Origin: Isurus oxyrinchus
Taxonomy: Eukaryota
Direction of reading: 5' to 3'
Assembly: GCA_026770705.1 (NCBI GenBank)
Contig: JANJGN010000052.1
Coordinates: forward strand, 1,922,001-1,986,000
Length of the DNA: 64,000 nucleotides
The translations under genes and the position numbers were made by a program. Positions 673 to 59,945 of this stretch are shown one piece after another (the stretch's first letter is position 1; the number at the start of each line of letters is the position of its first letter). Under the pieces are notes generated by a model. It ran no database searches. It had not been told where the DNA came from and saw only the letters and a program-made list of their open reading frames with translations.

Positions 673-734
673 GATACAGAAGGTTTTAAGACCTGCTCAT
701 GATTTCAGCTCAAAACCCAGGTAGATTCTCCCCA

Positions 735-19600: not shown

Positions 19601-22600
19601 NNNNNNNNNNNNNNNNNNNNNNNNNNNNNNNNNNNNNTGTGTGTTGTCTGTGTGCGCGTGTGCATGTGNNNNNNNNNNNNNNNNNNNNNNNNNNNNNNNN
19701 NNNNNNNNNNNNNNNNNNNNNNNNNNNNNNNNNNNNNNNNNNNNNNNNNNNNNNNNNNNNNNNNNNNNNNNNNNNNNNNNNNNNNNNNNNNNNNNNNNNN
19801 NNNNNNNNNNNNNNNNNNNNNNNNNNNNNNNNNNNNNNNNNNNNNNCATGTGTGTGTGTGTCTGTTGGTCCGTGTGTGGTCTGTGTAACCTGTAAACCTA
19901 ACCCTTCCACACTGATGGTCACGAACACCCCCCACTGCCAACAAATTTATCTCAGTAAGGAACATGGCACTGCCAACCTCGTCAATACCATCTTCTAAAC
20001 AGGGGATTGGGTAGGAGTCTGGTTTTATTGCTGCATTAACCTTTCTGTAATCTATGCAGAATCTGGTTGGAAATGAAATACCTGCTCCTTTTTACCTCCC
20101 TCCCTACGATGGTATCATTTTAACATATTGATGTGTCACAGCCGATTCTTTATTCTACAATCTGGGGTGTCTATCAAATAATTTACTTGACCAACCCTCC
20201 TAATTACCTTGTGGGGACCACTGAACTGCGCTTTCAGAGGCTCCCCCTGCCAAGGCAATGATACTAACACGTCATCCCCCTGGTTGTGATGTTCGGGTCA
20301 CAGCTTGCCTGTCTGCCCCATTCCTTCATCTCTGTTTGAGAAACTATAAGATGTTCTTGTGCCACTTTGGAGGCTCCCATGAGCCGTTCCTGAAACATGG
20401 ACACATCATCTGAAATAGAGGATTCATCCCTCTGTCCGGAATATCTTTCTTTGATGTATTTCAGACAGCCTCTTATCTCGTGTCCATAAGTTATTCCAAA
20501 AAGACTAAAACCTGCCGATTCAGTTGGTGAATCTCGTGTGGGAAATGCAAGAAAATCCAGTCCTTTGTCCCAGTCATGGGGAGTTCATGACAATAGCTTC
20601 AATCATTGTTTTGAGGGTTTGTTGGTCCCTCTCTAAAGATCCCTGTGTCTATGGATGATATGCTGCGGACTTTAACTGTTTTATACCCAAATTACTCATT
20701 ATGTTCGGAAAATTTTAAGACATAGAGATGGAACCTTGATCTGACTGGATCTCCAGCGGTAATCCATAATGGGTAAAAAATTGGGTTAACTTCCCTATTA
20801 CTACTTTAGCTGTAATTGTTCCTAAAGGGATGGCCTCTGGAAATCGAGTTGTCATATCCATCATAGTTAGGCCATACTGGAGTCCGGCTTTCATTTTCGA
20901 TAATGGTCTAACACAGTCCACTAATGCTCGTATCCAATGGTAACGGACAATTAACTCACTGGAGGAGGGGAATCCACAAATATCCCCATCCTCAATGAAG
21001 AGGGAGCCCAGCACATCAGGGCAAAAGATAAGGCTGAAGCATTTGCTACAACAATTATCCATTTCTGTCTGGCGTAAAAATAAGTCAGGAAATGGTGCTC
21101 AACCAGGGCTTACAAAAGAAATTAGGGATAGTATTAGATCCAGAGAGGAGACATAAAATTGCCAGGGGAAGCAGCAATGCTGAGGATTGGGAGCAGTTTA
21201 GAATTCAGCAAAAGTGGACAAAAAGATTGATCAAGAAGGGGAAAATGGAACATGGGAGTAAACTTGCAGGGAACGTAAAAACCGACTGTAAAAGCTTCTA
21301 TAAATATGTGAAGAGAGAAAGATTAGCAGTGACCGATGTAGGTTCCTTGCAGTCAGAAATGGGGGAAATTCTAATGAGAAACAAAGAAATGGCAGAAGAA
21401 CTGAACATATATTTTGGTTCTGTCTTCACAAAAGAGGACACAAATAATTTCCCAGGAATGTTAGGGAACCAAGTGTCTAGTGAGAGGGAGGAATTGAAGA
21501 TAATCAGGATTAGTTTTAAAAAATGGAGCTGGAGAAATTAATGGGTTAAAGGTTGAACAGTCCCCAGGGCCTGAAAATCTACATCCCAGAGACTAACGGA
21601 AGTGACCCTGGAAATATTGGAAGCACTGGTGGTCATCCTCCAAAATTCTATAGGCTCTGGAGCAGTTCCTATAGATTGGAGAGTGGCAATTGTAACCCCA
21701 CTATTTAAAATAGAAGGGAGAGAAAAAAACTGGGAATTACAGATCAGTTAGTCTAACATGGGGAAAACGCTAGAGCCTATTATATAAGGTGTGCTAACGG
21801 AACGCTTGGAAAGCATTAATGGGATTAGACAAAGTCAGCATGGGTTAATGAAAGGAAAATCATGCTTAACTAATCTACTGGAGATTTTGAGGATGTAACT
21901 TGTGGAATAGATAAGGGATAACCAGTGGATGTGGTGTTTTTAGATTTCAAGAAGGCTTTTGATAAGGTCCCACATAAGAGGCTAGTGGGCAACATTAAAG
22001 CCCATGGGATTGGGGGTAATTTATTGGCATGGATTGAGAATTGGTCGACAGACAGGAAACAGAGGGTCAGAATAAATTAGTCTTTATCTGAGTGGCAGGC
22101 GGTGACTAGTGGTGTACCACAGGGATCCGTGCTTGGGACCTAACTATTCATGATATATATAAATGACTTGGGTGAGGGAGCCAAGTGCAATATTTCCAGG
22201 TTTTCTGATGACACAACGCTGGGTAAGGGTGTGAGCTGTGAGGAGGATGCAAAGAGGCTTCAAGGCGATTTAGACATGTTGTGTGTGTGGGCAAACACAT
22301 GGCAGATGATGTGGATGAATGTGACATTGTAGGCTTTGGTGTGAAATACAGAAAGGCAGAGTATTATTTAAATGGTGATATAATGGGAAATGTGGATGTA
22401 CAAAGGGATCTGGGTGTCCTTGTGCACTAGCCAATGAAAGTAAACAGGCAGGTGCAGCAAGTAATTCGGAAGGCAAATGGTATGTTGGCCTTCATTGCAA
22501 GAGGATTTGTGTTCAGGAGTAGGGATGTCTCACTGCAGTTATACAAGGTCTTGGTGAGACTGCGCATGGGGTAAAACGTGCCGTTTTGGTCTCCCTCCCT

Positions 22601-25600: not shown

Positions 25601-28600
25601 ACTGAGATGAGGAGGAATTTCCTCTCTCAGAGTGGCGCTAGCCTGTGGAATTCTCTTCCCCAGAGAGCAGTGGAGGCTGGGCCATTGAATAGACTCAAGG
25701 CTGAGTGAGGCAGGTTTTTGATCGACAAGGGAGTCAAGGATTTGGGGGACAGGCAGGAAAATGGAGTTAAGGCCACAACCAGATCAGTGAGAGCAGGCTC
25801 GAGGGGCCGAATGGCCTGATCCTGTTCCTATTTCTTATGTTCCTACATTCTTACCTTCTTAAAATATTAAAGCTGCAGAATAAACATGCAAGTGACTGAC
25901 CCGCTCGACCCACCTTCCATCAGGGGCTGGAGGAGGTTACACAGATAGGGAGGTTTGTGGGTGCTGGAGGAGGTAACAGAGATAGGGAGGGCTGTAGATA
26001 CTGGAGGACATTACGCAGATAGGGAGGGTGGTAGGACCTGGAGGAGGTTGCAGAGATAGGGAGGGCTGTAGGGATTTGAGGAGTTTATGGCGATGGGGAG
26101 CGTGTAGGGACTGGAGGAGGCTGCAAGGGCAGAGAGGGTTTTAGGGGCAGTAGGAGTTTACAGGAATAGGAAAAGTTGTAGGGGCTGGACGGATTGCAGA
26201 GGTAGGGAGGGTTGGAAAGGCTGGTGGAGGTTTCAGAGGTAGGGAAGGTTGCAGGGACTGGAGGAGTTTACAGAGATGGGGGAGTTTTTGGGGCAGGATG
26301 GGGTTACAGAGATAGGGAGGGTTGTAAGGGCAGGACGAGGTTACATAGATATGGAGTGTGGCTGGGGCTGAGGGAGGCTACAGAGATAGGGAGGGTTATA
26401 ATGGCTGGAGGAGGTTACAGAGATAAAGGAAACTCTTAGGGACTGGAGGAGGTTACAGAGATAGGGAGGGTTGTAGTGGGCTGGAGGAGGTTACAGAAAT
26501 ATGAAGGGTTGTAAGAGATGGACCAGCTTACAGAGATAGGGAGAGGTATTCGGTCTGGAGGAGGTTGCAGAGATAGGGGAGGTTGTTAGGACTGGAGGAG
26601 GCTACAAATATCGCGAGGGTTATCGGGGCTTGAGGAGGTTAAAGAGATAGGGAGGGGTGTTGGGTCCGGAGGAGTTTGCAGTGATAGGAATGGTTTTCGG
26701 GATTGGAAGAGAGTACTGAGATAGGAGGGTTGTAGGGACTGGAGGAGTCTCCTGAGAAAGGGAGGGTTGTAGGGACTGGAGGAGGCTCCTGAGATAGGGA
26801 GGGTTGTAGGGACTGGAGGAGGCTCCTGAGATAGAGAGGGTTGTAGGGACTGGAGGAGGCTCCTGCGATAGGGAATGTTGCCGTGGATGAAGATAAAGGA
26901 GGAGATTACTGTAATAGGGAGGAAAAATATTCAATAATTTGGACATTGAGACTTTGCTTGACCAGGAGCCAGTCTCGGTCATCGAGCAGAGCGGGTGATA
27001 AGGGAACGGGACTTGGTGTGAGTAAGGACGTGGTCAGCAGTTTTGGATGGCCTCAAGTTTATGGAGTGTAGAGCATGTGTTGGAACAGTCGAGTCTGGAG
27101 GTAATGAAGGCGTGGATGAGGGTTTCAGCAGCAGATGAGCTGAGACAGGGTGAAGTCGTACGACGTTATGGAGGTGGAAATAGACGGTGTTAGTGAGGGC
27201 GCAGATATGAGGCCGGAAGCTCATCTCAGGATCAAATGGGACAACAAAGCTGTGAACAGATTGGCTTCAATCTCAGAGAGCTGCCAGGGAGAGGAATGGA
27301 GTTGGTAGCGAGGGAACAGAGTTTGGAGCGGGGAATGAAGACAATGGCTTCAGTCTTTCCAATATTTAATTGGAGGGAATTTCTGCCCATCCAGTACTGG
27401 ATGTCGGATAAGCAGCCTGATAATTTAGCAGCAGTGGAGGAGTCGAGAGAGGTGGTGGTGAGGTAGAGCTGGGGATCCTCAGTGGACAGGTGAAAACTAA
27501 TACTGTTCAGATGATGCTGCAAAGCCATTGCAAGTGATTCTCTGGCTACGATGAGATGGATAAGAATGGAGCCAGGGGAGAGCAGTTCCACCCAGCTGGA
27601 CGACAGTGGAGAGGGGTTGGAGGAGGATGGTGTGGTCGAGCGTGTCAAAGGCTGCAGACAGATCGAGAAGGACGAGGAGGGAAAGTTGACCTTTGTCACA
27701 GTCACACAGGATGCCATTTGTGACCTTGATAAGAGCTGTTTCAGCACAGTGGCTGGGGTGGGAACCTGATTGGAGGGATTCAAACATGGAGTTCCGGGAA
27801 AGATGGAACCGGATTCGGGAGATGGAAACACTTTCAAGGACTTTGGAGGGGAAAGAGAGGCTGGAGATGGGACGGGGGTTTACACGGACAGTGTGAGGGG
27901 TGGAAGGTGTAGTGGGGAGGAGACACTTCACTCAGGGGGGAGGTGTCATCACCCCTCAGCTCGGTTTACGTTACAGCTATGATGTGGATTCAATCACACA
28001 CAATAAGCTCATGGATCTGGGAGCAGAAATAGACAAATCATTAAAAATAGTGACGCTGGTTAACACAGCCAAAAAACAAGCAAATCAAACACTATTATTT
28101 CCCATTGAGTGTTGGATGTGAATTGGTGAGTAATTATAACACAGCACTTACCAGAAACCTGAAGCTGGGTTACAGGGTAATAGTTATGGCTCGGACCATT
28201 GCCAAATTTTATCGTGAAAAAATAAGGTCCTGCATCTTCCCGTCTGATGTTGTTTATAATCAGGGAACAGTCGCCATCTTTCAGGTCTCCAGACAGCCGG
28301 GTCCGATGGTGGAACTGTGATAACTCGCGACTGTGATCCTTGGAGTGAAAGGCTATAGACCATTTAGACCATTTGTTCTGTATGTATCTTCTCATTTTCC
28401 AGATTCCGACCTGTGGTTTCTTTACCAAATCTGATGGATAACTGTAATGACATGGAATCTGTACACACGAACCTTCCTGCGCTGTCACCTCTCGTGGAGT
28501 GTCACCTTTCCACTCTTGTGACAATCCAACTGGGGAGAGAAATATCAATATTTAACTCTGGATGTTTTGTTGATCCACTAGACTCGATATCCACCCCCTC

Positions 28601-34445: not shown

Positions 34446-34664
34446 ATCAGTGAGAAGATCGAGGATGTTTTGTGCTCTCAGCAAAACGTTTACCATGTGT
34501 GATCTGTCAGCTCATATTTGGGCAGCTGTAGTCATGAAGCTTCTCCATTGGCTCCGTGGGATTAGACTCCTCCCCCTTACCACAGAGGCTGAAACTCAGG
34601 CGATAGAGTCCCCAATACAGGTCTCGGGCCGTATGATACATTTCAACGACCCCTGTTATCATTA

Positions 34665-35685
34665 CGGAGGGAGTGCTGCACTGTCAGCGGGACTCTACTG
34701 TGGGAGTGCTGCACTGTGGGAGGGTCAGTAATGTGGGAGTGCTGCACTATCAGAGGGTCAGTAATGGGAGAGTGCTGCACTGTCAGAGGGTCAGTAATGA
34801 GGGAGTGCTGCACTGTCAGAGGGTCAGTAATGTGGGAGTGCTGCACTGTCAGAGGGTCAGTAATGAGGGAGTGCTGCACGGTCAGAGGTTCAGTACTGAG
34901 GGAGTGCTGCACTGTCAGAGGGTCAGTAATGTGGGAGTGCTGAACTGTCGGCGGGTCTGTATTGAGTGAGTTCCGCACAGTCAGAGGGTCAGTATTGAGG
35001 GGGTGCCGGACTGTGGGAGGGTTAGTACTGAGGTAGAGCCGAGTGTGAGAAGATATCCTTTCATGGCAAAGTTTAACTGGAATTTATTTAAACAGAATTC
35101 TTGTACTGTGTGTTATTGCAAAAGAAAGGATTTGAGGAACTAAGTCTTGTTCCCGTAAGCCTAAAAATAATTTTCACCGATTCAATGATTTAGCATTGAA
35201 ACCTCCCTCTTTGGGCACCAGTCTTGATTGAATCAACTCGAACAGCACCGTGGGAGGGTGAGTACTGAGGGAGTGCAGCACTGTGGGAGGGTGAGTACTG
35301 AGAGAGGGCTGCGCTGTGGGAGGGTGAGTACTGAGGGAGTGCTGCACTGTCAGAGAGTCTGTACTGAGGGAGTGCTGCACTGTCAGAAGGTGTGTACCGT
35401 GGGAGTGCTGAACTGTCGGAAGGTCAGTAGTGAGGGAGGGATACAGTGTCAGAGGATCAGTACTGAGGGAGTGCTGCACTGTGGATGGATGAGTACTGAG
35501 GGAGTGCTGCACTGTCAGATTGTCAGCCATGAGGGTGTGCTGCACTGTCAGAAGGTCAGTGCTGACAGGGTGCTGCACTTGAAAAGGGTCAATAATGAGG
35601 TAGTGCAGCACTGTCAGAGGGACAGTAATGAGGGAGCGCTGCACTGACCGAGGGTCAGGATTGAGGAAACGCTGCACTGTCAGTT
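34665..35685 (+). repeat. Two 33-bp minisatellite arrays (34665-35035, 35250-35685)
   Basis: Direct inspection. Confidence 0.9.
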
Positions 35686-36399
35686 CTGTGCGTGGTCTGC
35701 AATGTCCTAAGTGCATTCTAGGCACAGCCCAAGATTCCGCCTGATGTCTGTGTAACAACAACATCATGTACATGTCAAGAATAATTCTCACTGTGTTGGT
35801 GCAGCAAGACAGTTTTGGAATGGCACCACCACTGGCAGGAGTGTGCAGCTGCAATGTGACGTGTTTACATTGAAAATTTCCATTATAAAGATGGCCACAG
35901 GAATTCATCTGACTGGAAAAAGTGACAACATGAAATAATGTCTTTGAGCCAAGAATCTGGCAGCAAAATAAGAATTTTAATCCATAAGTATCTACAGAAA
36001 AGGCTGAACATTTTAATCACTTGTGTTAATCAATGTAATTTTATTCATAACCCAAATGCTTCTTACAATCTATCGCAGCATGAAAAAGGTGCAGCATTCA
36101 GAAAGCACATTCCAATCAGAGAACAGAGTTTAGCAACGTCACATTTCTGTTCATTCCTATTTGACCATGTTGGCTGCACACAGCCAGACAATGCCGTGGT
36201 TATGATGTGTCCACACAGCAGGACTGGGGAGCACCAGGTATAAGGAAAAGTTTCAGCTTGCTGAGGAGAAGAAGGAGAATCTCTCATTCCAGGTTTCTCT
36301 CCGTACATTAAGAAGCAGGCATGCCGATGTTTCATTGCACTCTGTCTGCTGATGGGAGTCCGCTTGGAAATTGTTGTTTGTGCTGATGGAAAGAATAAG

Positions 36400-37000
36400 C
36401 TTTTCATAAATGGAGGGATTGAGTACAAACACAGGGAGGTTATGCTGAACATTTATAAAGCTCTGGTTAGGTCACAGCTAGAGTATTGTGTCCAGTTCTG
36501 GTCTCCTCACTTTGGGAAGGAAGTGAGGGTCCTTGAGAGGGTGGGGAGGAGATTGAGCAGAATGGGTCCAGGGATGAGGGATTTTAGCTACAAGGTTGGG
36601 TTGGAGAAGCTGGGGTTGTTCTCCTTGGAGCAAAGGAGATTGAGGGGGGATCTGATCGAGGTGTACAAGATGATGATGGGTTTTGATACGGTAGACAAAG
36701 AGAAGCTGTTGCCATTAGCTGATGGGACAAGGACTGGGGGACACAGATTGAAGGTTGTGGGCAGTGGGGGGATGTGAGGAGGAACTTTTTTACACAGCGA
36801 GTGGTAATGAGCTGGAACTCGCTGCCTACGAGGATGGTGGAAGTGGAGACGATGAACGATTTCAAAAGGAAATTGGATGGACACTTGGAAATAAACTTGC
36901 AGGGATACGGGGATAGAGCGGGGGAATGGGACTGAGTGGATTGCTCTACACAGAGACAGCATAGACTTAATGGGCTGAATGGTCTCCTACTGTGCTGGAA
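36400..37000 (+). mobile_element. CR1 LINE 3' end
   Basis: YKALVRSQLEYCVQFWSP..RRLRGDLIEVYK. Confidence 0.9.
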
Positions 37001-37138
37001 TGCCTCTCTGATACGAAGGTGATTCTAACCAGGACACTGACCAGTTTGATTACAACTTAACACAACATCACACGTTATTTGTCCGCACTGACTGACCAGA
37101 TTGTTGCTTTACAAAGCTTCAAACAGTCTGTCGACTTC

Positions 37139-37258
37139 CTTTCACTGTTTGTCTCTCCCAGACACAGACTCCAGTGATAGTGATAACCACAGCCACAAGG
37201 AATATCACAGCTCGTATTCCCAGGATCAGGATCACATGCAGAATCTCTCCTCCACTGT
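37139..37258 (-). pseudogene. Gene B transmembrane exon with intramembrane Arg
   Basis: ttctctag acceptor; SGGEILHVILILGIRAVIFLVAVVITITGVCVWERQTVK; donor reads gaagtc, not gtaagt. Confidence 0.8.
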
Positions 37259-37639
37259 CTAGAGAACACACAGAAAGAAATCATCACTGACTCTCCGCTT
37301 TCAATCTCTCACTCTGGCTGAACAATCAAGCTTCATATCACTGCAACATTTGCTGTAATATTGACCCATCCACTGGGATTCAATGTGGAATGAATGTTTT
37401 CATTGTAAACACTCTAAGAGTGGACAATCGGAACTTTCCCCTCAGCGTGGAACATTGGTGAGAATGGATCATTGTGCTGTTGGACTCCCTGTCCAATGTT
37501 ACTCTCCATCGCTGTGTACAGGATTGTGCTGTAGAAAATTCTGGAAACGTTTAGTGCAGGGTGGAAATCCATCTCGGACGCGTGTGCGAATCGAGCAGAA
37601 TCGAGATGGACTCCCCCACGGACTTACACCCCCCGCTTA

Positions 37640-38015
37640 ATAAACAGTTCCAATCTTTACCCAGAGAGAGGGGAGAATGTGGAACTCACTCCCACAGGGA
37701 TTGGTTGAGGTGAACAGTATCGATGTATTTAAGGGGCAGGAGGGTCGGTAACCAGAGGGACACAGATTGACCAACTGGAGGGGGAGATGAGGAGAATTTG
37801 TTTTGACAGAGCGAGTTGTTGTGATCTGGAAGGTGCTGCCTGAAAGGGCGGTGGAAGCAGATTCAATAGGAACTTTCAAAAGGGAAATTGGATAAACACT
37901 TGAAGGAGGAAGATGGGGTAAAGTGGAGTGGTGGTTAGTGGATCTGATTGGATAGAACATTGAAAGACCTGGCACAGGCACAGTGGGCTGAATGGCCTCC
38001 TCCTGTGCTGTATCA
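37640..38015 (+). mobile_element. CR1 LINE 3' fragments
   Basis: tggaactcact..; tail gggctgaatggcctcctcctgtgctg. Confidence 0.7.
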
Positions 38016-40048
38016 TTCTCCACTTCCATGATCTCTCCCCCAGTCAGTAACCACTCCAGATCCCTCTTGAAGGCGACAGAGAAACAGGAACTACCACACC
38101 CACTGACAGCACATTCTCAAGGATCCCTACTTTCTGGGAAAAGATGAACTCCCCAACATCCAGCCTATTCCTGCTTCCCAGAGAGTGTAAACCCTTCAGG
38201 GAGGCACTGAGGAAGTTTTCAATAAAATGAATTATCAAATCTATCATTTGAGAAATAATTTAATTCTGATGAACTCACAGCTTGTGTAGCAAACTGGGAA
38301 GTGGAGTTGCTTGAAAAGCTGGGAAACACAAGGATTAAGTGCTACAATGCCACCACTGGTGGGAGACTGTAACTACAGCGTGACGTTTACATAGGCAGTC
38401 ATCATTATAAACAGGGGCATTGGACATACTGGGAAATATGTGCACTGGAAAGGTGAGTAAATGATGTAAGATTTTCACCAGCAGGAATTCTCTAACTAAA
38501 CCTCTCCACTTCTCTCTTACTCTCAGATACACAAACAAAATCACACAGAATCAGATAAGGAGGAGTTGGGGCCGGTGATTGTTCGAAGGGTTAGCTTTCA
38601 GGAAGCTTCTTAAAGGGAGAGAGAGAGTTGGAGAGGCAGAGAGTATCTGTGAGTGTCTCTATGCATCTGAGTGTCTGTAATAGACTTTGTAATTTCCATT
38701 TCTTCCATAAACATGATTGGGAACACAAATCCCAGAATCCAGGCCAACTCTCCAGTGCAGTACTCAGGTAAGCCACAGGGCAGTGTGTGCTAGTGTGTTT
38801 GTTCGTGAGTGTGTCTTTGTAATTGCTCATACATGTGTGTCTGCACGTGTCTATTTAGTTCTGTATATTTGTGTGTGTTTGTGCAATGTTTGAATCTGCG
38901 AGAGATGTTGAAGTCTGTGTAACTCACGTTCCACACTGATGGTTATGAACCCCTCCACTGCTCCATGTTCATTCTCTGCCACACACTGATAGTCTCCAGT
39001 GTCCCGATATGTAATGGGAGGAATCACCAACCACAGCTCATTGTTGGAACTTGTTCTGTTCATTTGGACATTAAGATGTCAGGGCAGGAATCAAGAAGCC
39101 CGTTCGCAGGATTACCAACAGAAAGTGAACCACAATTTATACTTAATGGGAAGAGAGTGCTGATTGGTTGGCAAGTGGTCTCTGATAGGTGGAGGTGTTG
39201 CCATGGAGAATGGTGTGTGCGAGATGTAAACTTTAGACAGCTTGTCTCTTTATTCAGTAATAATCAAATAAAGATCAATTAACTTCAATCGACTGTGAAG
39301 CACTTTGAGAGGTCTGAGAATGTGGACACTGAGAACGGGCTGCACTGTCAGAGGGTCAGCGCTGAGGGAGTGCTGATGTAGAATGAAAGGTGTATGTACT
39401 TACCTTGCACAGTTAGTACGAGGGTCCGCTCCGATGAAACAGATGGATATCTCACTCTGCAGCTGAGTGTGTGTCCGTGGTGTTTGAGTGATGGGATCAG
39501 GGTCAGAACAGAAGTATAGGTCAGAGTGACACCATGCTGAGTTACAGTGTTTGAGACTGATCCAGGTACGTCAGTGGGAGTGTCCCAGGTTAAGACAGGT
39601 GCTGCTGTTCCATTGCACGTTGTGTTGAAGGTGCAGCTTACATCCACAGGCTTTCCTGCAATAATTTCAGCAGGGAATATCATGGGTTTATCTGTGGAAT
39701 CTAACAGACAGAAAATGGATCCTTTTAGAGAAATATAACGTGAAGCATCAGTTCAAATAGAAACCACAGTCCCACAAGAGAAAGCACTTTTACAAGGATG
39801 ATATCAGAACTGAGAGGTTACAATGATCAGGAAAGATTTTCTTGCTCTTTGGCAGTTGTGTTTCTGTCTCTCAGCTTAATACACGTTCACTCCGAGACAT
39901 GTGAATTGAGAACACTGGATGAGAGAAGAGGCTCAGACCAGAGATTGGAGTTAAAAGCAGAATACTGCGGATGCTGGAAATCTGAAACAAAAACAAAAAT
40001 TGCTGGAAAGACTAAGCAGGTCTGACAGTATCAGTGGGGAGGAAGACA

Positions 40049-40087
40049 GGGTTAACGTTTCGAGTCCGTATGACTCTTCATCAGACC
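40049..40087 (-). ncRNA. Minimal type I hammerhead ribozyme motif in a Penelope-derived insertion
   Basis: GGT-CTGATGA-A-GAGTC-ATACG-GACTC-GAAA-CGTTA-ACC; insertion 39944-40080 flanked by the direct repeat TCAGACCAGAG. Confidence 0.7.
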
Positions 40088-42127
40088 AGAGGTTTGAGTT
40101 CACTGGCTTCTCATTTCCTCAGTGATCTGGGTGATTTAGCACCTTGTGGTTTGTTGGATCTTGCTGTGCACAAACTGCCTGCTGTGTTTTACATCTGTGA
40201 CCACAATTCAGGAATAATTTCATTGGCTGTGAATGGATTTGGATCCTCCTGAGGTGGTAAATTGCGCTGCAGAAATGCACATCATTCTTTTATCGATACG
40301 TCAGACTTTTAAACAGGACAGGAGAGATTGATGGGAGTGGATAACCTGATAATACAGTTAATGCTTTTAATCATTGATATTAAAGTGAGTATTAGAGGTT
40401 GCTTTAGGACTGAACTGGAAGCTATCACCAGGTTATTGAGAATCAGACAGTGTGTTATAATAAGCTGTGTTTTGTGTTAATATGTAAACGTCACAGTTTG
40501 TGTTATTTCCCATTGAGTGTTGAATGTGAATTGTTGAGTAATTATAACACAGCACTTACCAGAAACATGAAGCTGGGTTACAGGGTAATAGTTATGGCTC
40601 GGACCATTGTCAAATTCTATTCTGAAAAAATAAGGTCCTGCATCTTCCCGTCTGATGTTGTTTATAATCAGGGAACAGTCGCCATCTTTCAGGTCTCCAG
40701 ACAGCCTGGTCCGATGGTGGAATCTTTGATCCCTGTGACTGTGACCCTCGGAATGAAAGGCTATAGACCATTTCGGCTGTGGGTTCCCATCTATTCCTTT
40801 CAAGCAGATTCCGACACGTGATCTCCCTACGAAATTTGATAAGTAACTGTAATGACATGGAATCTGTACACACGAACCATCCTGCGCTGTCACCTCTCGT
40901 GAAGTGTCGCCTTTTCAATCTTGTGACAGTCCAACTATGGAGAGAAATGTCAATATTTAACTCTGGAAGGTTTGTAGATCCACTAGACTCGATATCCACC
41001 CCCTCCATCACTGGGGCTCAGTGGCTGCAGTGTGGACCATCTACAGGACACACAAGGAACTCCCCAAGGTTTCACAACGGATGGAAGAGAATCCTGGACA
41101 CAGGAGTGGACAAGTTCATTCTACATTGGCTCATGGTGCTCAGGACCCTGTTTAGTGAAGCCAGTCTTCCACCCAACACAGAGTCTACAAGACACACAGG
41201 GAAACTGTGTAAACATCTCATCTCTCTAAACTGACTGGTTTGAGCTTCGGTTTAACTTTCAGTATTTTTAAATTTCCATATTGTGGTTGCTATGGTGAAA
41301 CTGTGCAGGAAGTGTGAGGGCTGGACTCTCTGTCTATTCTGACTGCAGCTGTGATGTGGTCGTGGTGATTCTCAGTAAAATGAAACCCTCTGAGCTCCTC
41401 CATCCCCGAGGTTTAGGGAGTGAATTCCAGAGCTCAGGCCCCAGGCAGCTGAAGGCCCGGCCGCCAGTATTGGAGTGATGGGAATCGGGGGATGGTCAAG
41501 AGGCCGGAATTGGAGTAACACAGAGATCTGGGAAGTTGTTTGTGTGAGTTGCAGGAGGTTACAGAGATAAAGAGATAAGAATGATCTTTTACAAAGACTG
41601 TTAAACATAAATCTGTCCGAGCTGATGATGATATTACCTTGGAGAAGTGACAGGTGGAAGTAAGATTTCCCGACCATCGTCCACTCCCAGATATTCCATC
41701 CACTTCTCACTCTCAAACTGTGAAAGAGAAAGGAGTTAATGAGACCTCACCTCTTGTCCGACAGCTCTCGAGAGATCAGAACTGCTTTTAGACAATGTCT
41801 TCATAGACTAATTTGATTCTCTGTGGGATGATAGGTGCTCTGCAGAGAGTTACAAGTCTTTAAGTAAGACAAACAATGATTGATTTGCATTTCTATAGCA
41901 CCTTTCACTATCTCAGGGCATCCCAAAGCTCATGTCTCTGCAGTTCCCTCATCCCTTGAGCTAGAAAGATGTTCTGTACAACAGACTTGAGTCTCACACC
42001 CAGAATTCAATAATCAGTAAAAATCTTTCAAAGGCATCAATCATTGGAATCTGTCTTTATAAAGTCACAACATCAACAAAGGACAGTGTTGGTGGTGGAA
42101 GTGAATTCCAATCATTCCGTTACTTAC

Positions 42128-47103: not shown

Positions 47104-50100
47104 TTTCTCACACACTTGAAGATGAAGAATCCACTCAGTCCAACACTCAAACAGATTCCAGCTCCAAGCAATCCTGCTTTCCATTCATTGGAATCTCGCC
47201 CTGTAAAATCAGCCAATGAATGACTCCGGTACAGTTTGAGAATGGTTCCCTATGTACATGTAGTAATTCTGAACTTGTGAAGTGATATTGTCTATGCATG
47301 AAAGGTCTATACAAATAAATTTATCTATGTAATATTTATTGATAATATCCATGTACATGCAGGTTTCTATAAGGAGGATTCACATATAACAGAGGTGCCA
47401 AGCTGCTGAGGTGACACACAGGATTACAAAAATTCCAAACAGCGGAAACAACATGCTATAGACAGAGCAAAGCGATCCCACAACCAACGATTCAGATCTA
47501 AGCTCTGCAGTCCTGCCACATCCAGTCATGAATGGTGATGGACAATTAAAGATCTAACAGGAGGAGGATGTTCCACAAATATCCCCATCCTTAATGATGG
47601 GGGAGCTCAGCACATCAGTGCAAACGACAAGGCTGAAGCATTGGCAACCATGTTCAGCCAGAAGTGCTGAGTGGATGATCCATCTCGGCCTCCTCCAGAG
47701 GGTCCCAGCATCACAGATGTCAGCTTTCAGACAATTCGATTGACTCCACGTGACATCAGCAATCAGCTGATGATACTGGATACAGCAAAGGCTCTTGGTC
47801 CTGGCAACATCCCGGCAACAGGAAATAATGTGGCTACAAGAGCGGGTCAGAGGCTGGGAACTCTGTGGTGAGTAATTCAACTCCTGACCACCCAAAGCCT
47901 GTCCACCATCGGACAAGGCACAAGTCAGGAGTGTGATGGAATAATCTCCAATTGCCTGAATAAGTGCAGCTCCAACAACACTCAAGAAGCTCGACACCGT
48001 CCAGGAGCAGCTTGTTTGATCGACAGCCCATCCACCAGCATAAACATTCATACCCTCCACCACTGGCACACAATGGCAGCAGTGTGTGCACCATCTACAA
48101 GATGCACTGCAGCAACTCACCAAGGCTCCTTCGACAGCACCTTCCAAACTCTTAACCTCTTCCACTGAGACAGTTCCAAGTCAGTGAGGTGTGTGATTTG
48201 GAAGCGAACTTGAGGTGTTGGTGTGCCCTGGGACTTGGAACTATATCGGACGTTCCTTCACCATCACTGGGACAAAATCCTGGAACTCCCTCCCTAACAG
48301 CACTGTGGGTGTGCGTACACCACATGGACTGCAGTGGTTAAAGAAGGCAGCTCACCACCACCTTCTCAAGGGGCAGTTACAGATGCGCAATAATTTCTGG
48401 TCTTATCAACAATGCCCACATCCCATGAGCTAATAACAAGAGAACGTTCAATTCTGTGTAACTCACGTTCCACAGTGATGTTATAAATCCCTCCACTGCT
48501 CCATGTTCATTCTCTGCCACACACTGATAGTCTCCAGTGTCCCTGGATGTAACGTGAGGAATCACCAACCACAGCTCATTGTTGGAACTTGTTCTGTTCA
48601 TTGGGACATTAAGATGTCGCCACGTCAGGTTAGAAGCTGGGAAGCTCTCGACAGAGCAGATTATCACTGCAGAATTCCCCTCAATTATATTGATCGATGA
48701 AGCGTTAATCATACCAAGAGAAGTAATTGAGAGATTCTGTGGTTTGTCTGAAAACAAATAAAGATCAGTTACTTACATTGACTGTGAAACACTTTGAGAG
48801 ACACTGAGAATGTGAAAGGTGTGATATCAATGTAGGTTCCTTCACCACAAAGCACTTAATTCAGGCAGACACTTCAGTTCAGTACTGAGGGAGTGCTGTA
48901 CTGTTGGAGGGTCAGTACTGATGGAGTGCTGCACTGTTGGAGGGTCAGTACTGAGGGAGAGCTGCCCCCTTGGAGCGTGAGTACTGATGACCTGCTGCAC
49001 CGTTGGAGGGCGGTTACTGTGAAGTCTGGACTGCCGCATAGTCAGTATTGAGCAAGTACTTCACTGTCAGAGAATAGTACTGAGGGAGTGCTGAACTGTT
49101 GGAGGATCAGTACTGAGGGAGTGCTGCACTGTCGGAGGATCAGTACTGATGGACTGGTGCACTGTCGGAGGATCAGTACTGAGGGAGTGCTGCACTGTCG
49201 GAGGGTAAGTACTGATGGAGTGGTGCACTGTCAGAGGGTCAGTACTGAGGGAGTGGTGAACTGTCGGAGGGTCAGTACTGAGGGATTGCTGCACTGTTGG
49301 AGGGTCAGTACTAGAGGAGTGTTGCACTGTTGGAGGGCCAGTACTGAGGGAGTGCTGCACTTTCGGAGGGTCAGTAATTAGGGAGCTCTGCACTGTTGGA
49401 GGGTCAGTACTGAGGGAGTGCCGCAGTGTCGGAGGGTCAGTACTGAGGGAGTGCTGCACTGTCGGAGGGTTAGTACTGAGGGAGTGCTGCACTGTCGGAG
49501 CGTCAGTAATTAAGGAGCTCTGCACTGTTGGAGGGTGATAAGGCCATAAGACCACAAGACGTCAGAGCAGAAGGAGGCCATTCGGCCAGTCAACTCTGCT
49601 CCGCCATTCAATGATACCATGTCTGATCTGACAATCCTCAACTCCACTTTCCTGCCTTTTCCCCATAGCCTTTGATTCCCTGACTGATTAAAAAACTGTG
49701 TATCTCAGCCTTGAATATAATTAATGACCCAGCCTCTGCAGCTCTCTGTAGTAAAGAATTCCACACATTCACTACCCTCTGAGAGAAGAAACTCCTCATC
49801 TCTGTCTTAAATGGGTGACCCCTTACTCTGAGATTATGCCCTCTGGTCCTAGACTCTCCCACAAGGGGAAACAACCTCTCAGCATCTACCCTGTCAAGCA
49901 CCCTAAGAATCTTATATGTTTCAATAAGGTCAGCTCTCATTCTCCTAAACTCCAATGAGTACAGGCCCATCCTACTCAACCTCTCCTCATATGAAAATCC
50001 CTCCATTACTGGGATCAACCTAGTGAACCTTCTCTGGACTGCCTCCAATACCAGTACATCTTTCCTTAGATAAGGGAACCAAAACTGCGCACAGTATTCT

Positions 50101-53100
50101 AGGTGTGGTCTAACTAGTGCCTTGTATAGTTTTAGCAAGACTTCCCTATTTTTATACTCCATTCCCTTTGAAATAAAGGCCAACATTCCACCTGCCTTCC
50201 CTATTAACTGTTGAACTTGTATGTTATCTTTCTGATGACCCCCAAATTCCTCTATGCTTCAGCTTTCCAATGTCTTTCTCCATTGAAATAATATTCAGCT
50301 CCTCTATACATCCTGCCACAGTGCAGCAGCTCACATTTTCCCACATTATATTCCATCTGCCAAGTTGATGTCCACTCACTGAACCTGTCTATGTCTCTCT
50401 GTAGACTCTTCGTGTCACCCTCACCACTTGCCTTCCCATCTATTTTTGTGTCATCCACAAACTTGGCGAAAGTACATTAATTTCCCTCATCCAAGTCATT
50501 AATATATATTGTAAATAATTGTGGCCCCAGCACTGATCCTTGTGGCACTCCACAGATTGCCATCCTGAAAATGCCCCCCTTATCCCAACTCTCTGACTTC
50601 TATTAGTTAGTCGATCCTCTATCCATGCTAATATACTGCCCCCAACACCATGGGCTCTTATCTTATTAAGTAGCCTTATATGTGATACTTTACTGAACAA
50701 CTTTTGGAAATCCAAATATATTACATCTACTGGTTCCCCTTTATCTATCCTGTTTGTTACCTCCTCAAAGAATTCTAATAAATTTGTCATGCATGATTTC
50801 CCCTTCATGAAGCCTGTGTGTGATTAAATTATGCATTTCTAAATAGTCTGCTATTACATCCTTTATAATGGACTCTAACATGTTCCCAATGACAGATGTT
50901 AAGCTAACTGCCCTATAGTTACCTGTTTGTTGTCTCCCTCCCTTTTTGAATATGGGTGTTACATTGGCAGTTTTCCAATCCTCTGGGAGTTTCCCAGAAT
51001 CTAAGGATTCTTGGAAGATTAAAACCAGTGCATCCACTATCTCTGCATCTACTTCCTTTAATATCCTAAGATGCAACCTATCAGGTCCAGGGGACTTATC
51101 AGCCTTGAGACCCATTAATTTCGCTAGCGTTATTCTCTAGTGATAGTTACTGTATTTATTTCCTCTCCCCACCCCCCTTTTGCCCCTTGATTATTTAGTA
51201 TTTTTGGAATGCTATTAGTGTGTTCTACCGTGAAGACTGATGCAAAGTATTTATTCAACTCCTCTGTCATTTTCTGGTTCCTCATTATTATTTCCCCAGC
51301 CTAGTTCTCTAAGGGGCCCATGTTCACTTTGGTCTCTCTCTCCTTTCTTATATATTTAAAGAAGCTTTTATTGTCCTTTTTTATATCAATTACTAGTTTA
51401 CCTAGTTTTCTCCCTCTTTATTTATTTTTTGGTCATCTTCTGTTGGTTTTTAAATCTCTCTCAATCCTCTGGCTTACCACTAATCTTTGTCGTGCTGCAT
51501 GTTTTTTCTTTCAATTTGACACACACCTTAACTTCTTTGGTTAACCCAGGTTGGTTTATTCTCTTCCTACAATCCTTCTTCCTCACTGGGATATATCTTT
51601 GTTGTGAGTCATGAGCTATTTTCTTTAACATCTGCTTTGTTCATCCAGCATCTTTTCTGCTAAACCCCTTTCCCAGTCCACTCCAGACAACCCTGTCCTT
51701 ATTCCTTTGTAATTAAACTTATTTAAGTCCAGCACAGTTGTTTCCGACCCAGGTTTCTCAGTCTCAAACGGAATGCTAAATTGTACCAGGTTATGGTTAC
51801 TGTTTTCCAGGGGATCATTTATTCTGAGATCATGTATGAAACCTGCCTCATTACACATTACCAGATCCAAAATAGCCTGATCCCTGGTTAGATCCACGAC
51901 ATATTATTCCAGGAAACTGTCTTGAATACACTCTATGAATTCTTGCTCATGGCTACCTCTGCCAATTGGGTTTTCCCAATCTACATGAAGATTAATGTAC
52001 TGCCTTTTTTACATGCCCTCATTATCTCATGATTTATTGTCTGTCCTACAGCCGAGCTACAGTCATGGGGCTGATAGACCACTCCCACCAGTTCCTTGTT
52101 CCACTTGTTATTCATTACCTCGAGCCATATGGATTCTATACCCTCCGATCCAAGATCATTTCTTGCTTTCGTACTTATTCCATCTCCTATTAACAAAGCT
52201 ACCCCACCACCTTTCCTTCCTGCCTGTCTTTTTGAAAAGTCACATACCCCTGAATATTTATTTCAAAGCTTTGATCTCCTTGTAACCATGTCTCCATAAT
52301 GGCTATAAGATCAAACCCATTAACCTCTAATTGTGCCTTTAATTCATTTATGTTGTTCCAAATACTATGTGCATTTAAGTCAAGAGCCATTAATTTTGTC
52401 TTTTTATCATTTTCCTCCCTCTGACACTATTTGCTGATGTATTTTAATGTTTGGACACTGTGTACCCACCTGTCACACGCTGGGTATCATCACCAAAACA
52501 GCTATCCTGCAATGCTGGCAAATCCTTTTGCTTTGTAAGCCTACATATACCCTCTCCAGAACACTCTGCCCATCTATTTAGTTTAAAGGCAATACTGAGG
52601 GAGAGCAGCACTGTCAAAGGGTCATTACTGAGGGAGTGTTGCACAGTTGGAAGCTCTGGAACAAGGGACTGCAGCATTATCTGAGGGTCAGTCGGGAGGG
52701 AGGTATTCAATGTTGGATTGTAAGTTCTGAGGGAGCGCTGCAGAGTTGGAGGTTCAGTAGTGAAGGAGTGCTGCACTGTCAGAGGGTCAGTACTGAGGGA
52801 GTGCTGCACTGTCAGAGGATCAGTACTGAGGGAGTGCTGCACTGTTGGAGGGTCAGTACTGTGGGAGTGCTGCACTGACGGAGGATCAGTACGGAGAGAT
52901 TTCTAAACTGTTGGAGGATCAGTACTGAGGGAGTGCTGCACTGTCAGAGGGTCAGTACTGAGAGAGAGTTGCACTATCAGTGGGACAGGACTGAGGGAGT
53001 GCTGCACTGTCAGAGGGACAGGACTGAGGGAGTGCTACACTGTCAGTGGGTCAGGACTGAGGGAGTGCTGCACTGTCAGAGGGTCAGTACTGAGGGAGTG

Positions 53101-56100
53101 CTGCACTGTCGGAGGGTCAGTACTGAGGGAGTGCTGACTGTCAGAGGGTCAGTACTGAGGGAGTGTTGCACTGTCATAGGGTCAGTAATGAGGGAGTGCT
53201 GCACTGTCATAGGGTCAGTACTGAAGGAGTGCTGCACTGTCAGAGGGTCAGTACCGAATGAGTGCTGCACTGTCATGGGGTGAGGACATTGCGATTCCTG
53301 CTCTGCTCTATCGGTCTCTTGGCTGGAAATAAAAGCCGCTGTGTTACTGTTCAGAAACTGTTATTAATTGTGTTCTGGTCACTATTTTCCCTAAAAAACA
53401 GATTATCTGATTCTCATCAGAATACCTTTCTATGGGATCCTGCTGTGCATTATCTACACTGTTCTAGCTAATGTACAATGAAAGGTCGTCCGTACTTACC
53501 TTGCACAGTGAGTACGAGGGTCCGCTCCGATGAAACAGATGGATATCTCACTCTGCAGCTGAGAGTGTGTCCGTGGTGTTTGAGTGATGGGATCAGGGTC
53601 AGAACAGAAGTATAGGTCAGAGTGACACCATGCTGAGTTACAGTGTTTGAGACTGATCCAGGTACGTCAGTGGGAGTGTCCCAGGTTAAGACAGGTGCTG
53701 CTGTTCCATTACACGTTGTGTTGAAGGTGCAGCTTACATCCACACGCTTTCCTGCAATAATTTCAGCAGGGAATATCGTGGGTTTATCTGTGAAATCTAA
53801 CAGACAGAGAATGGATCCTTTTAGAGAAATATAACGTGAAGCATCAGTTCAAATAGAAACCACAGTCCCACAAGAGAAAGCACTTTTACAAGGATGATAT
53901 CAGAACTGAGAGGTTACAATGATCAGGAAAGATTTTCTTGCTCTTTGGCAGTAGTGTTTCTGTCTCTCAGCTTAATACACGTTCACTCCGAGACATGTGA
54001 ATTGAGAACACTGGATGAGAGAAGAGGCTCAGACCAGAGATTGGAGTTAAAAGCAGAATACTGTGGATGCTGGAAATCTGAAACCAAAACAAAAATTGCT
54101 GGAAAGACTCAGCAGGTCTGACAGTATCAGTGGAGAGGAAGATAGGGTTAACGTTTCGAGTCCGTATGACTCTTCATCAGACCAGAGGTTTGAGTTCACT
54201 GGCTTCTCATTTCCTCAGTGATCTGGGTGATTTATTACATTGTGGTTTGTTGGATCTTGCTGTGCACAAACTGACTGCTGTGTTTTACATCTGTGACTAC
54301 AATTCAGGAATAATTTCATTGGCTGTGAAGGGATTTGGATCCTCCTGAGGTGGTAAATTGCGCTGCAGAAATGCACATCTTTCTTTTATCGATACGTCAG
54401 CCTTTTAAACAGGACAGGAGAGATTGATGGGAGTGGATAACCTGATAATACAGTTAATGTTTTTAATCATTGATATTAAAGTGAGTATTAGAGGTTGCTT
54501 TAGGACTGAACCGGAAGCTATCACCAGGTTATTGAGAATCAGACAGTGTGTTATAATAAGCTGTGTTTTGTGTTAATATGTAAATGTCAAAGTTTGTGTT
54601 ATTTCTCATTGAGTGTTGAATGTGAATTGTTGAGTAATTATAACACAGCACTTACCAGAAATGTGAAGCTGGGTTACAGGGTAATAGTTATGGCTCGGAC
54701 CATTGTCAAATTCTATCCTGAAAAAATAAGGTCCTGCATCTTCCCGTCTGATGCTGTTTATAATCAGGGAACAGTCGCCATCTTTCAGGTCTCCAGACAG
54801 CCGGGTCCGATGGTGGAACCGTGGTAACTCGTGACTGTGATCCTTGGAGTGAAAGGCAATGGGAGCCCAGGGAATCTGTTTCTCATTATTAAACCAGACT
54901 CCACCTCGCGGTTTGCTTTCCAAATGTGATGGATAACTGTAATGACATGGAATCTGTACACACGAACCTTCCTGCGCTGTCACCTCTCGGGGACTGTCAC
55001 CTTTCCACTCTTGTGACAGTCCAACTGGGGAGAGAAATATCAATATTTAACTCTGGAAGGTTTGTAGATCCACTAGACTCGATATCCACCCCCTCCATCA
55101 CTGGGGCACAGTGGCTGCAGTTTGGAACATCTACAGGACACACAAGGAACTCCCCAAGGTTTCACAATGGATGGAAGAGAATCCTGGACACAGGAGTGGA
55201 CAAGTTCATTCTACTTTGGCTCATGGTCCTCAGGACCCTGTTTAGTGAAGCCAGTGAGACAGTGTCACTGTGCCTTGTATTATAATGCTCCTGTGTAGCC
55301 CCTTGGATTGTTTTTTTTTACAGTTAAGGCGCTATGTAAATATAATCTATTGCTCTCTGCTCATCTGGACCATTTGGATTGTTAATTTCAAGCGGCCTGG
55401 TGACTGCTTCATGTTCAGTCCAAATGCAGCCTCTAATTATCACTTTAATGTCAATGATTAAATGTGACCCAACACACTGTCTACAAGACACACCAACTGA
55501 GATCCATTCAGTGCTGATTTACAAGACAGGACAATGGATTAGGAGCCGTCAGAACTCCCCCCATTATCACCGTCATGAATCACTAATTAGCCTAACATTC
55601 CTGTCTGCTCTTCAACACAGCTGATTGGCTAATCTGATTCAATCTGATTGGTGCACTTTGGACCTTCATTGTCTGAGGAATCTCTTTGGATCCTCATTGT
55701 TTTAGGAATATCTTTGGATCCTCATTGTTTAAGGAATCTCTTTGGATCCTCATTGTCTAAGGGATTATTTCTGATCCAAACCCCATATTGTTGTATTGTT
55801 GATTCCGATGCAGCATTGTAGACTGACTTGTCCCCAAGCTCAGCACTGACCCTACTCCAGCAGACACTGTGAAACACACTAACAAAGTGCCTCTAGCCTG
55901 AGCTCTGCATGTGTCGAGAGAAAGACAAATATACAAACTGAATATTGACACCTTTACACACAGACAGCTTTACCTTCCTTCTCTCTTTCAGTTATCTTGC
56001 TCCCTTATTGAAGTATCTAGCAAGGTGAGAATGGACAGGAAGTGTGACACTGAACAGCCTGTCTATTCTAGGAGCTGCTGTGTTGTCTTCATGGGAAATT

Positions 56101-57192: not shown

Positions 57193-57429
57193 TCACTTTG
57201 TGAGGATGCAGCTCATGTTTAGAGTTTTTTGAAGCTGTTAACCCTTTGCGTTCTGGACTTGTGATGATATTTCTGCTCAAAAGTGGAAAGTCATTGACCA
57301 GGAATTTCTCCTGTGGGTCATTGGGTTTCAAACCCTCTCTCGCTCTCTGAGTGAGAAGGTCGTCTGTTCGAGATTCATTTGGCAAAATTCAGACTGCCAA
57401 ACCAGACCGGCACTCGGTGTCAGGACTGA

Positions 57430-59718: not shown

Positions 59719-59724
59719 GAATTA

Positions 59725-59945
59725 TTGGAATCTCTCTTTATAAAGTCACAACATCAACAAAGGACGGTGTTGGTAGTGGAAGTGAATTCCAATCGTTCCG
59801 TTACTTACCCAGGACCTGTCCGACTGCTCGCCTGGGGAGGAACTGCCCACACGCTCTGCTTGGGCTGAATGACCTCTTCCTGTGCTGCTCCCTCTGTGTA
59901 TTTAATGAGAAAGGGTGGATGTGTCACTGTGAGACAAAGTGGGAG
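59725..59945 (-). other. Fifth copy of the first-exon block
   Basis: Donor at 59809; AP-1 and ETS sites mutated. Confidence 0.75.

What the first reader, a model, noticed from the sequence alone, without database searches (positions are those of the whole stretch)
37119..37258. Activating-type transmembrane exon with an intramembrane Arg, in a frame the ORF track misses
Seen: in phase with the upstream C2 exon it reads EILHVILILGI-R-AVIFLVAVVITITGVCVWERQTVK (CGA at 37212-37214). It is unrelated to the neutral TM of genes A and C, and read-through adds only GSRQTV*. The architecture is V-C2-C2-TM(Arg). Established: a basic TM residue with a short tail marks FcR-gamma or DAP12-coupled receptors; human Siglec-14 is V-C2-C2 with a TM Arg. 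Inference: the activating counterpart of gene A.
Basis: partly seen in the sequence, partly recalled or inferred. Interest (0 to 1): 0.85.

Follow-up and report, generated by a model that had tools for sequence, protein, structure and literature searches.

The report
Shark Siglec-like arginine membrane exon, dead copy
This is a real copy of a conserved shark exon that gives Siglec-like immune receptors a membrane anchor with a buried arginine and almost no tail (the usual build of an activating receptor), but the gene it closes here carries a premature stop and other damage, so this copy is most likely a pseudogene.

Summary
On the minus strand, after a strong AG acceptor, exon 37258-37119 reads SGGEILHVILILGIRAVIFLVAVVITITGVCVWERQTVKGSRQTV*, with Arg at 37214-37212.

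The exon is not a chance ORF. It matches the extreme C-terminus of predicted proteins from seven shark genera (best representative hit E 3e-13). ILGIRA-IF is invariant in 12 aligned sequences.

RNA-like contigs from three studies join the acceptor at 37258 directly to the first C2 exon at 39404. A genomic-DNA-like run lacks this joint.

- **Architecture.** It is V-C2-TM(Arg), not V-C2-C2-TM(Arg). The second C2 exon is a decayed relic, and nothing shows it in a gene B transcript.
- **Gene integrity.** Gene B has an in-frame TGA at codon 20 of the V exon, a Cys in place of the core Ig tryptophan, and a His in the signal peptide. It is probably a pseudogene or a null allele.

The RNA contigs are only 95-99% alike, so they may come from a paralogue.

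The same cassette also sits on CD22-like and SLAM-like ectodomains. The adaptor cannot be read from the sequence. This scan already found the cassette on other DNA of this genome, and its follow-ups agree. I rate it a new member of a known kind, of modest interest.

The parts
37119..37258 (-). Terminal coding exon: TM helix with buried Arg, a 12-residue tail and the TGA stop (the finding itself)
   Evidence: sequence and frame; hydrophobicity 2.93; homologues, Arg invariant; acceptor at 37258 used in spliced contigs
37212..37214 (-). CGA codon for the intramembrane Arg (ILGIRA motif)
   Evidence: invariant in 12 aligned sequences
37259..39403 (-). Intron removed in RNA-like contigs (GT..AG on the minus strand); it contains the C2b relic
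   Evidence: joint 37258-39404, skipped ends CT..AC on the plus strand, in X1, X4 and X5 and absent from X18
38929..39078 (-). 3' half of a second C2/I-set exon (C2b relic) with an intact phase-1 donor; the 5' half upstream (to about 39270) is decayed
   Evidence: alignment to three intact paralogous exons; three in-frame stops, acceptor lost, about 55-bp insertion, 4- and 8-bp deletions; matches only positions 49-90 of the 90-position I-set profile
39404..39700 (-). C2-set exon (C2a), 297 nt, open, phase 1 at both ends; the splice partner of the TM exon
   Evidence: (C2-set_2, 2e-8); 96-97% identical to white-shark proteins; donor at 39404 used
40560..40934 (-). Siglec-type V-set exon, 375 nt, phase 1 at both ends, open except for one in-frame stop
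   Evidence: alignment to three paralogous V exons; V-set 2e-11, Ig_CD22 30.7 bits; Siglec-5 6.8e-10
40915..40917 (-). In-frame TGA replacing the Trp of the conserved SQEWKG motif (codon 20 of the reading frame)
   Evidence: homologues keep W
40804..40806 (-). TGC (Cys) where paralogues and Siglecs have the core strand-C Trp (TGG)
41638..41677 (-). Leader exon: ATG, MVGKSYFHLSLLQ plus one base, GT donor; His replaces Leu in the hydrophobic core
   Evidence: paralogous leaders at 56599 and 33850 read MIGKSYFLLSLLQ
36020..36185 (-). 3' flank homologous to the 3' end of inhibitory gene A (7795-7627); it holds the first AATAAA after the stop (36045-36040)
   Evidence: mean column identity 83%

Best explanation
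The exon is a genuine copy of a conserved shark cassette: a terminal coding exon for a transmembrane helix with one buried arginine (ILGIRAxIF...GxCV) and a tail of 5-12 residues without tyrosine.

Gene B has these parts, all on the minus strand:
- leader 41677-41638
- V exon 40934-40560
- C2a exon 39700-39404
- TM exon 37258-37119

An intact version would be a two-domain V-C2-TM(Arg) receptor. By analogy with Siglec-14, -15, -16 and other paired receptors, such a receptor reaches the surface and signals only through a separate adaptor chain that has an acidic TM residue.

Gene B looks like a duplicate of an inhibitory A/C-type gene. It shares the promoter and leader, the V and C2 exons and a piece of the 3' flank. 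Its neutral TM and tyrosine-motif exons were replaced by the cassette.

This copy is disabled. It has a nonsense codon at the start of the V exon, a substitution of the core Ig tryptophan, a histidine in the signal peptide and a decayed second C2 exon.

Shown: the sequence, frame, homology, Arg conservation, splice boundaries and the defects. Inferred: adaptor coupling, the activating function and the route of origin.
For: - **Sequence and frame:**
- **Homologues:** they lie at the C-terminus of proteins of Scyliorhinus torazame, S. canicula, Carcharodon carcharias, Chiloscyllium punctatum, Hemiscyllium ocellatum, Rhincodon typus and Mustelus asterias. The motif ILGIRA-IF is invariant.
- **Direct C2a-to-TM junction:** the junction LTVQ-D-SGGE is present in white-shark P0020, P0017 and P0018 and in catshark P0011 and P0001.
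- **Splicing:** joint 37258-39404 has GT..AG ends in three RNA-like runs from three studies and is absent from the DNA-like run.
- **Siglec-type V domain:**
- **Defects:** TGA at 40917-40915, TGC at 40806-40804, leader His, C2b decay.
- **Shared ancestry with genes A and C:** the V alignment has 87% mean column identity, the 3' flank 83%, and the leader and upstream block is 93-96% alike.
Against: - Apart from the single TGA, the V exon is open over 118 codons, and the C2a and TM exons are intact with every invariant cassette residue. Any inactivation is therefore recent, or the TGA is an allele or an assembly error. I could not see the read letters at 40915 (one search lists only the best-supported differences).
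- A cryptic AG 24 nt downstream (exon start 40910) would keep the frame and skip the stop. No evidence supports its use.
- Contigs carrying the joint are 95-99% alike. The X4 contig has 5 mismatches in 146 nt and diverges 3' of 37113, so transcription of this copy, as opposed to a paralogue, is not shown.
- No adaptor was examined.
Confidence: 0.72

Rival explanations
1. Gene B is a working activating V-C2-TM(Arg) receptor. On this view the TGA is an assembly error, a null allele of one individual, or is bypassed through the in-frame cryptic acceptor 24 nt downstream.
For: All other coding sequence of the leader, V, C2a and TM exons is open and the splice sites are canonical. The exact C2a-TM joint is present in RNA-like contigs. 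The cassette keeps every invariant residue.
Against: The stop replaces a Trp that every paralogue and orthologue retains. A second, independent change removes the core Ig Trp at 40806-40804, and the signal peptide has gained a His. Contigs over the V and C2b exons carry paralogue sequence at their loose ends, so nothing ties transcripts to gene B.
Confidence: 0.2
2. One reading: a three-domain V-C2-C2-TM(Arg) receptor of the Siglec-14 layout.
For: The surviving 3' half of C2b keeps a phase-1 GT donor that is in frame with the TM exon. Scyliorhinus torazame P0002 shows that C2b-to-TM(Arg) junctions exist in other genes.
Against: The 5' half of C2b has no acceptor, several indels and three in-frame stops, and the first Cys of the domain is lost. 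Contigs that cover C2b diverge into paralogue sequence (loose ends at 39005, 39080 and 38928). The listed joints show none that uses C2b, and the one listed TM-exon splice skips it (89 further joints were not shown).
Confidence: 0.04
3. A chance hydrophobic ORF, or an exon of a non-Siglec gene.
For: The exon is short (45 codons), has no Pfam match and has no copy elsewhere in the window.
Against: E 3e-13 in 1.84 billion proteins, with hits only at receptor C-termini. The acceptor is used in spliced contigs that continue into the Siglec-like C2a exon. In other sharks the cassette also closes CD22-like and SLAM-like genes, but here the flanking exons are Siglec-like.
Confidence: 0.01

Closest known systems
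Predicted shark proteins carrying the same cassette, e.g. Carcharodon carcharias 'CD33-like' (P0020, 270 aa) and 'Siglec-12' (P0017, P0018), and Scyliorhinus canicula 'Siglec-13' and 'Siglec-14 isoform X2' (P0011, P0012)
   Same: Same leader, Siglec-type V, C2a and TM(Arg) exons, and the same C2a-to-TM junction with a split codon (D or Y) before SGGE. The TM exon is 93% identical to P0017 and P0018, and C2a is 93-97% identical to white-shark proteins.
   Different: Those are intact open reading frames from automatic annotation. Gene B has a nonsense codon, a core Trp-to-Cys change and a relic C2b exon in the last intron. Its V domain is only 72-75% identical to theirs, with a divergent C-C' region.
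Human Siglec-14, Siglec-16 and Siglec-15, and mouse Siglec-H (activating Siglecs coupled to DAP12; established knowledge)
   Same: A Siglec-type V domain with the YFFRxE arginine, one basic residue inside the TM helix, a short tail without tyrosine motifs, and neighbouring inhibitory genes with very similar ectodomain exons.
   Different: No sequence similarity in the TM or tail, so the origin is independent. The shark cassette has two Ig domains here where Siglec-14 has three. The shark cassette is also shared with CD22-like and SLAM-like ectodomains. Adaptor association is untested.
Activating receptors made by recombination of a charged-TM exon onto another ectodomain, e.g. macaque activating KIR derived from KIR2DL4 (PMC8102735)
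   Same: A TM exon with an Arg is moved onto different ligand-binding ectodomains. An Arg in the outer part of the helix decides which adaptor is used.
   Different: A different gene family and a different lineage. Here the cassette spans at least three shark orders and three ectodomain types.

Membership tests
Siglec (sialic-acid-binding Ig-like lectin) | N-terminal V-set domain of Siglec type | tested here: met
   Pfam V-set 2.2e-11 and Ig_CD22 30.7 bits (cut-off 27). The best solved relatives are Siglec-5 (6.8e-10), sialoadhesin, Siglec-10, Siglec-8, CD33, Siglec-7 and MAG.
Siglec (sialic-acid-binding Ig-like lectin) | Essential arginine on strand F (YFFRxE) that binds the sialic-acid carboxylate | tested here: met
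   GPYFFRIEF in gene B aligns with GSYFFRVE of Siglec-5.
Siglec (sialic-acid-binding Ig-like lectin) | C2-set domain(s) following the V domain | tested here: met
   C2a exon: C2-set_2 2.1e-8. The second C2 is a relic.
Siglec (sialic-acid-binding Ig-like lectin) | Binding of sialylated glycans | not testable with these tools
   Needs glycan-array or cell-binding assays on an intact paralogue.
Siglec (sialic-acid-binding Ig-like lectin) | Intact Ig core (strand-C Trp) and an open reading frame | tested here: not met
   TGA at 40917-40915 and TGC (Cys) at 40806-40804 in place of Trp.
Adaptor-coupled activating immunoreceptor (Siglec-14/-15/-16 type) | One basic residue inside the TM helix | tested here: met
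   The Arg at 37214-37212 lies in a 29-residue uncharged stretch and is invariant in homologues.
Adaptor-coupled activating immunoreceptor (Siglec-14/-15/-16 type) | Short cytoplasmic tail without ITIM, ITSM or ITAM tyrosines | tested here: met
   The tail ERQTVKGSRQTV has no Tyr. Homologues have tails of about 4-12 residues, none with Tyr.
Adaptor-coupled activating immunoreceptor (Siglec-14/-15/-16 type) | Physical and functional association with DAP12, FcR-gamma, DAP10 or CD3-zeta through the TM charge | not testable with these tools
   No adaptor sequence was available from any tool. Akula et al. 2014 (PMC4016189) reported no FcR-gamma homologue in the shark data of that time.
Adaptor-coupled activating immunoreceptor (Siglec-14/-15/-16 type) | Paired with an inhibitory receptor of similar ectodomain in the same cluster | tested here: inconclusive
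   The V exons of genes A, B and C align with 87% mean column identity, and the C2a exons and the leader and upstream block are closely alike. Genes A and C have a neutral TM. Their tyrosine-motif tails were seen only as ORFs. Gene B's C-C' region is divergent.

The most novel reading that the evidence does not exclude
The ILGIRAxIF...GxCV exon may be an ancient elasmobranch signalling cassette that has been moved by exon shuffling onto Siglec-like, CD22-like and SLAM/CD2-like ectodomains. A stingray protein has a similar LAVRGVLF helix. Invariance well beyond the Arg would then mark a specific helix-helix interface with an adaptor that has not been identified in cartilaginous fish, where FcR-gamma was once reported absent. 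Gene B would be a recently lost member, recording how an inhibitory Siglec-like gene is converted into an activating one.
Probability: 0.35. Interest if true: 0.55.

Novelty: new member of a known kind. Interest (0 to 1): 0.3.

Why it matters
Paired activating and inhibitory Siglecs are best known from mammals. This locus shows that sharks built the same arrangement independently, using one conserved arginine-bearing membrane exon that several receptor families share. The locus appears to lie beside a hepcidin gene, as MAG and CD22 do in human. That points to an old adaptor-coupled signalling system in cartilaginous fish whose partner chain is still unnamed. This particular copy adds little function, because it is probably dead. 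It does preserve a snapshot of the conversion: A/C-type promoter, ectodomain exons and 3' flank, a relic C2 exon, and the cassette in place of the neutral TM and tyrosine-motif exons.

Tried and rejected
- **Copies in the window:** searched for copies of the exon by blastn and tblastn and found none.
- **Remnant of the neutral TM or tyrosine-motif exons downstream of the cassette:** none found. Only a piece of gene A's 3' flank is there.
- **Pfam on the TM exon:** no family.
- **Literature:** I looked for shark or cartilaginous-fish Siglecs and for DAP12, FcR-gamma or DAP10 in sharks. Nothing specific turned up apart from Akula et al. 2014, which reports no FcR-gamma in the shark data of that time, and a passing mention in the whale-shark genome paper.
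- **Region-restricted word searches:** they returned only three further proteins.
- **Whether the RNA contigs come from gene B itself:** this cannot be told from contigs at 95% likeness. Loose ends over the V and C2b exons match paralogue sequence.
- Exons were searched one by one, by reference.
- **Complex prediction:** not used, because no adaptor sequence was available from a tool.

Full report
**The observation**

The finding lies on the minus strand. A pyrimidine-rich tract ending in AG (37260-37259) precedes an exon that starts at 37258.

- In phase 1 the exon reads SGGEILHVILILGIRAVIFLVAVVITITGVCVWERQTVKGSRQTV, then TGA at 37121-37119.
- The Arg codon CGA is at 37214-37212.
- The stop-to-stop ORF has 53 codons and no start codon, which explains why an ORF listing misses it.
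- A 21-residue hydropathy scan of the minus strand finds only two convincing membrane helices outside simple repeats. One is this exon (2.93) and the other is the neutral TM of gene A at 13111-13049.
- The exon has no paralogue in the window.
- It is unrelated to the neutral TM exon, which gene A shares with gene C at 47256-47086.

**The exon is not a chance ORF**

phmmer of the 45-residue peptide against 1.84 billion representative proteins gave eight real hits, with E from 3e-13 to 4e-5. Each hit lies at the extreme C-terminus of a shark protein. Further searches added catshark and white-shark members. The sources are RefSeq or GenBank predictions from these species:
- Scyliorhinus torazame
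- S. canicula
- Carcharodon carcharias
- Chiloscyllium punctatum
- Hemiscyllium ocellatum
- Rhincodon typus
- Mustelus asterias

In an alignment of 12 sequences, including the window, the positions ILGIRA-IF, a later V, and G-CV are invariant.

Of the 104 family proteins fetched, 16 carry the GIR[AG] core. In 15 of them it lies at the C-terminus. The exception is P0099, where it lies upstream of further Ig sequence and looks like a fused gene model.

The cassette closes several kinds of ectodomain:
- Siglec-like, as V-C2, V-V-C2, V-V-C2b-C2b and V alone
- CD22-like, with many Ig domains
- SLAM/CD2-like

A stingray protein (P0093) has a similar helix, LAVRGVLF, with a short tail.

Across shark orders the cassette is somewhat better conserved than the neutral TM exon. 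It is 77-80% identical to catshark and bamboo-shark sequences, against 60-71% for the neutral exon.

**The gene the exon belongs to**

tblastn with catshark P0012, together with DNA alignments, defines gene B on the minus strand.

| Part | Coordinates | Notes |
|---|---|---|
| Leader | 41677-41638 | MVGKSYFHLSLLQ plus one base, GT donor |
| V exon | 40934-40560 | 375 nt |
| C2a exon | 39700-39404 | 297 nt |
| TM exon | 37258-37119 | the finding |

All junctions are phase 1.

The V exon is of Siglec type:
- Pfam gives V-set 2e-11 and Ig_CD22 above its cut-off.
- Its best solved relatives are Siglec-5, sialoadhesin, Siglec-10, Siglec-8, CD33, Siglec-7 and MAG.
- GPYFFRIE aligns with YFFRVE of Siglec-5.

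The nearest proteins are from white shark: C2a is 93-97% identical and the TM exon 93%. The window therefore comes from a lamniform shark or a close relative.

**The architecture is V-C2-TM, not V-C2-C2-TM**

Between C2a and the TM exon lies a second C2 exon, but only its 3' half (39078-38929) aligns well with the three intact paralogous exons. The 5' half has lost the acceptor and carries an insertion of about 55 bp. It also has deletions of 4 and 8 bp and three in-frame stops. Pfam matches only positions 49-90 of the I-set profile.

Contigs of public runs laid on 36100-41750 show a joint from 37258 to 39404. The skipped ends are CT..AC on the plus strand, which is GT..AG on the minus strand. 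The joint is present in three RNA-like runs from three studies (X1, X4, X5) and absent from the large DNA-like run X18.

The same junction, LTVQ-D-SGGE, stands in white-shark P0020, P0017 and P0018 and in catshark P0011 and P0001.

Contigs that cover the C2b relic or the V exon run into paralogue sequence at their loose ends (39005, 39080, 38928, 40722). They say nothing about gene B itself.

**This copy looks dead**

- Six codons into the V exon, TGA (40917-40915) replaces the Trp of SQEWKG. The three other V exons of the window and all homologues keep that Trp.
- The core strand-C Trp of the Ig fold is TGC (Cys) at 40806-40804. Paralogues have TGG there.
- The leader has His where the two paralogous leaders have Leu.

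Otherwise the leader, V, C2a and TM exons are open and the cassette keeps every invariant residue. The loss is therefore recent, or the stop is an allele or an error. An in-frame cryptic AG (exon start 40910) could skip the stop, but nothing supports its use.

The X4 contig with the joint has 5 mismatches in 146 nt and diverges 3' of 37113. That fits a paralogue such as the gene of P0017. Transcription of gene B itself is not shown.

**Origin of gene B**

Gene B shares several blocks with the inhibitory-type genes A and C:
- the leader and upstream block, 93-96% alike
- the V and C2 exons
- a 166-bp piece of gene A's 3' flank (36185-36020 against 7795-7627, 83%), which holds the first AATAAA after the stop

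No remnant of the neutral TM or the tyrosine-motif exons is left. I infer that gene B is a duplicate of an A/C-type gene in which the cassette took the place of the inhibitory 3' exons. Primate Siglec-14 relates to Siglec-5 in the same way (established knowledge).

**Mechanism**

A basic residue buried in a TM helix, together with a short tail lacking tyrosine, is the established signature of receptors that pair with DAP12, FcR-gamma, DAP10 or CD3-zeta through an acidic TM residue. The Arg here sits about a third of the way into the helix from the outside. That position does not discriminate between adaptors.

Akula et al. 2014 (PMC4016189) found no FcR-gamma homologue in the shark data of that time. 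I found no paper on shark activating Siglecs or on shark DAP12. Coupling therefore remains an inference.

**Context in this scan**

Notes of this scan list many copies of the same 140-letter exon on other DNA of this genome. Two follow-ups (s1-868598, s1-300793) reached the same reading: the exon is real and spliced, automatic annotation already shows it in other sharks, three receptor families reuse it, and the adaptor cannot be determined. I tested those points myself here and they hold. What is specific to this copy is the pseudogene state and the relic C2 exon.

**Limits**

- The joined model was not searched or saved.
- No N stretch was filled.

**Verdict**

This is a new member of a known kind. 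It is of low to modest interest for this copy, and somewhat more for the cassette as a whole.

Noticed in passing
window 57351-59740, 52590-53290, 48880-49540, 34659-35683, 11224-11650, 8183-8411, 740-850: Arrays of a 33-bp satellite (it reads TVRGSVLRECC in one frame) recur in introns and between genes throughout the Siglec-like cluster. They produce very long spurious ORFs on both strands.
   Followed up: partly
window 34456-33900, 42286-41727, 57192-56649: The block upstream of each leader exon (genes A, B, C) is 93-96% identical. It is far better conserved than most exons, which suggests recent duplication or gene conversion of the promoter and leader unit.
   Followed up: partly
window 18525-18662, 19364-19637, 19669-19846: Three N stretches lie inside or beside the tandem C2b-type exons of gene A (17761-17430, 18971-18640). 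The number of these exons in gene A cannot be read from the window. The stretches were not filled.
   Followed up: no
window 49641-52426 and 27235-27931 (minus strand): Long ORFs with reverse-transcriptase-like sequence (for example YLDFQKLFSKVSH and FADDTK-like motifs) lie in introns of genes C and A. They are probably LINE fragments.
   Followed up: no
proteins P0093 (Hypanus sabinus) and P0099 (Chiloscyllium plagiosum): A stingray 'Siglec-10' has a related Arg-bearing helix, ILLISLAVRGVLFLL, with an 11-residue tail, hinting that the cassette predates the shark-ray split. P0099 carries the cassette in the middle of the protein, probably because two neighbouring genes were fused in the annotation.
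   Followed up: partly
just before the window's start (scan note s1-866825): A hepcidin-like gene is noted 2.8 kb upstream of the window. In human, HAMP lies next to MAG and CD22 on 19q13 (own knowledge), so this Siglec-like cluster may sit at the ancestral MAG/CD22 locus.
   Followed up: no
window 1-4700: The region holds dense low-complexity sequence (CT/GT-rich and Pro- or Gly-coding-like repeats, GC up to 0.61) with very long artefactual ORFs on both strands.
   Followed up: no
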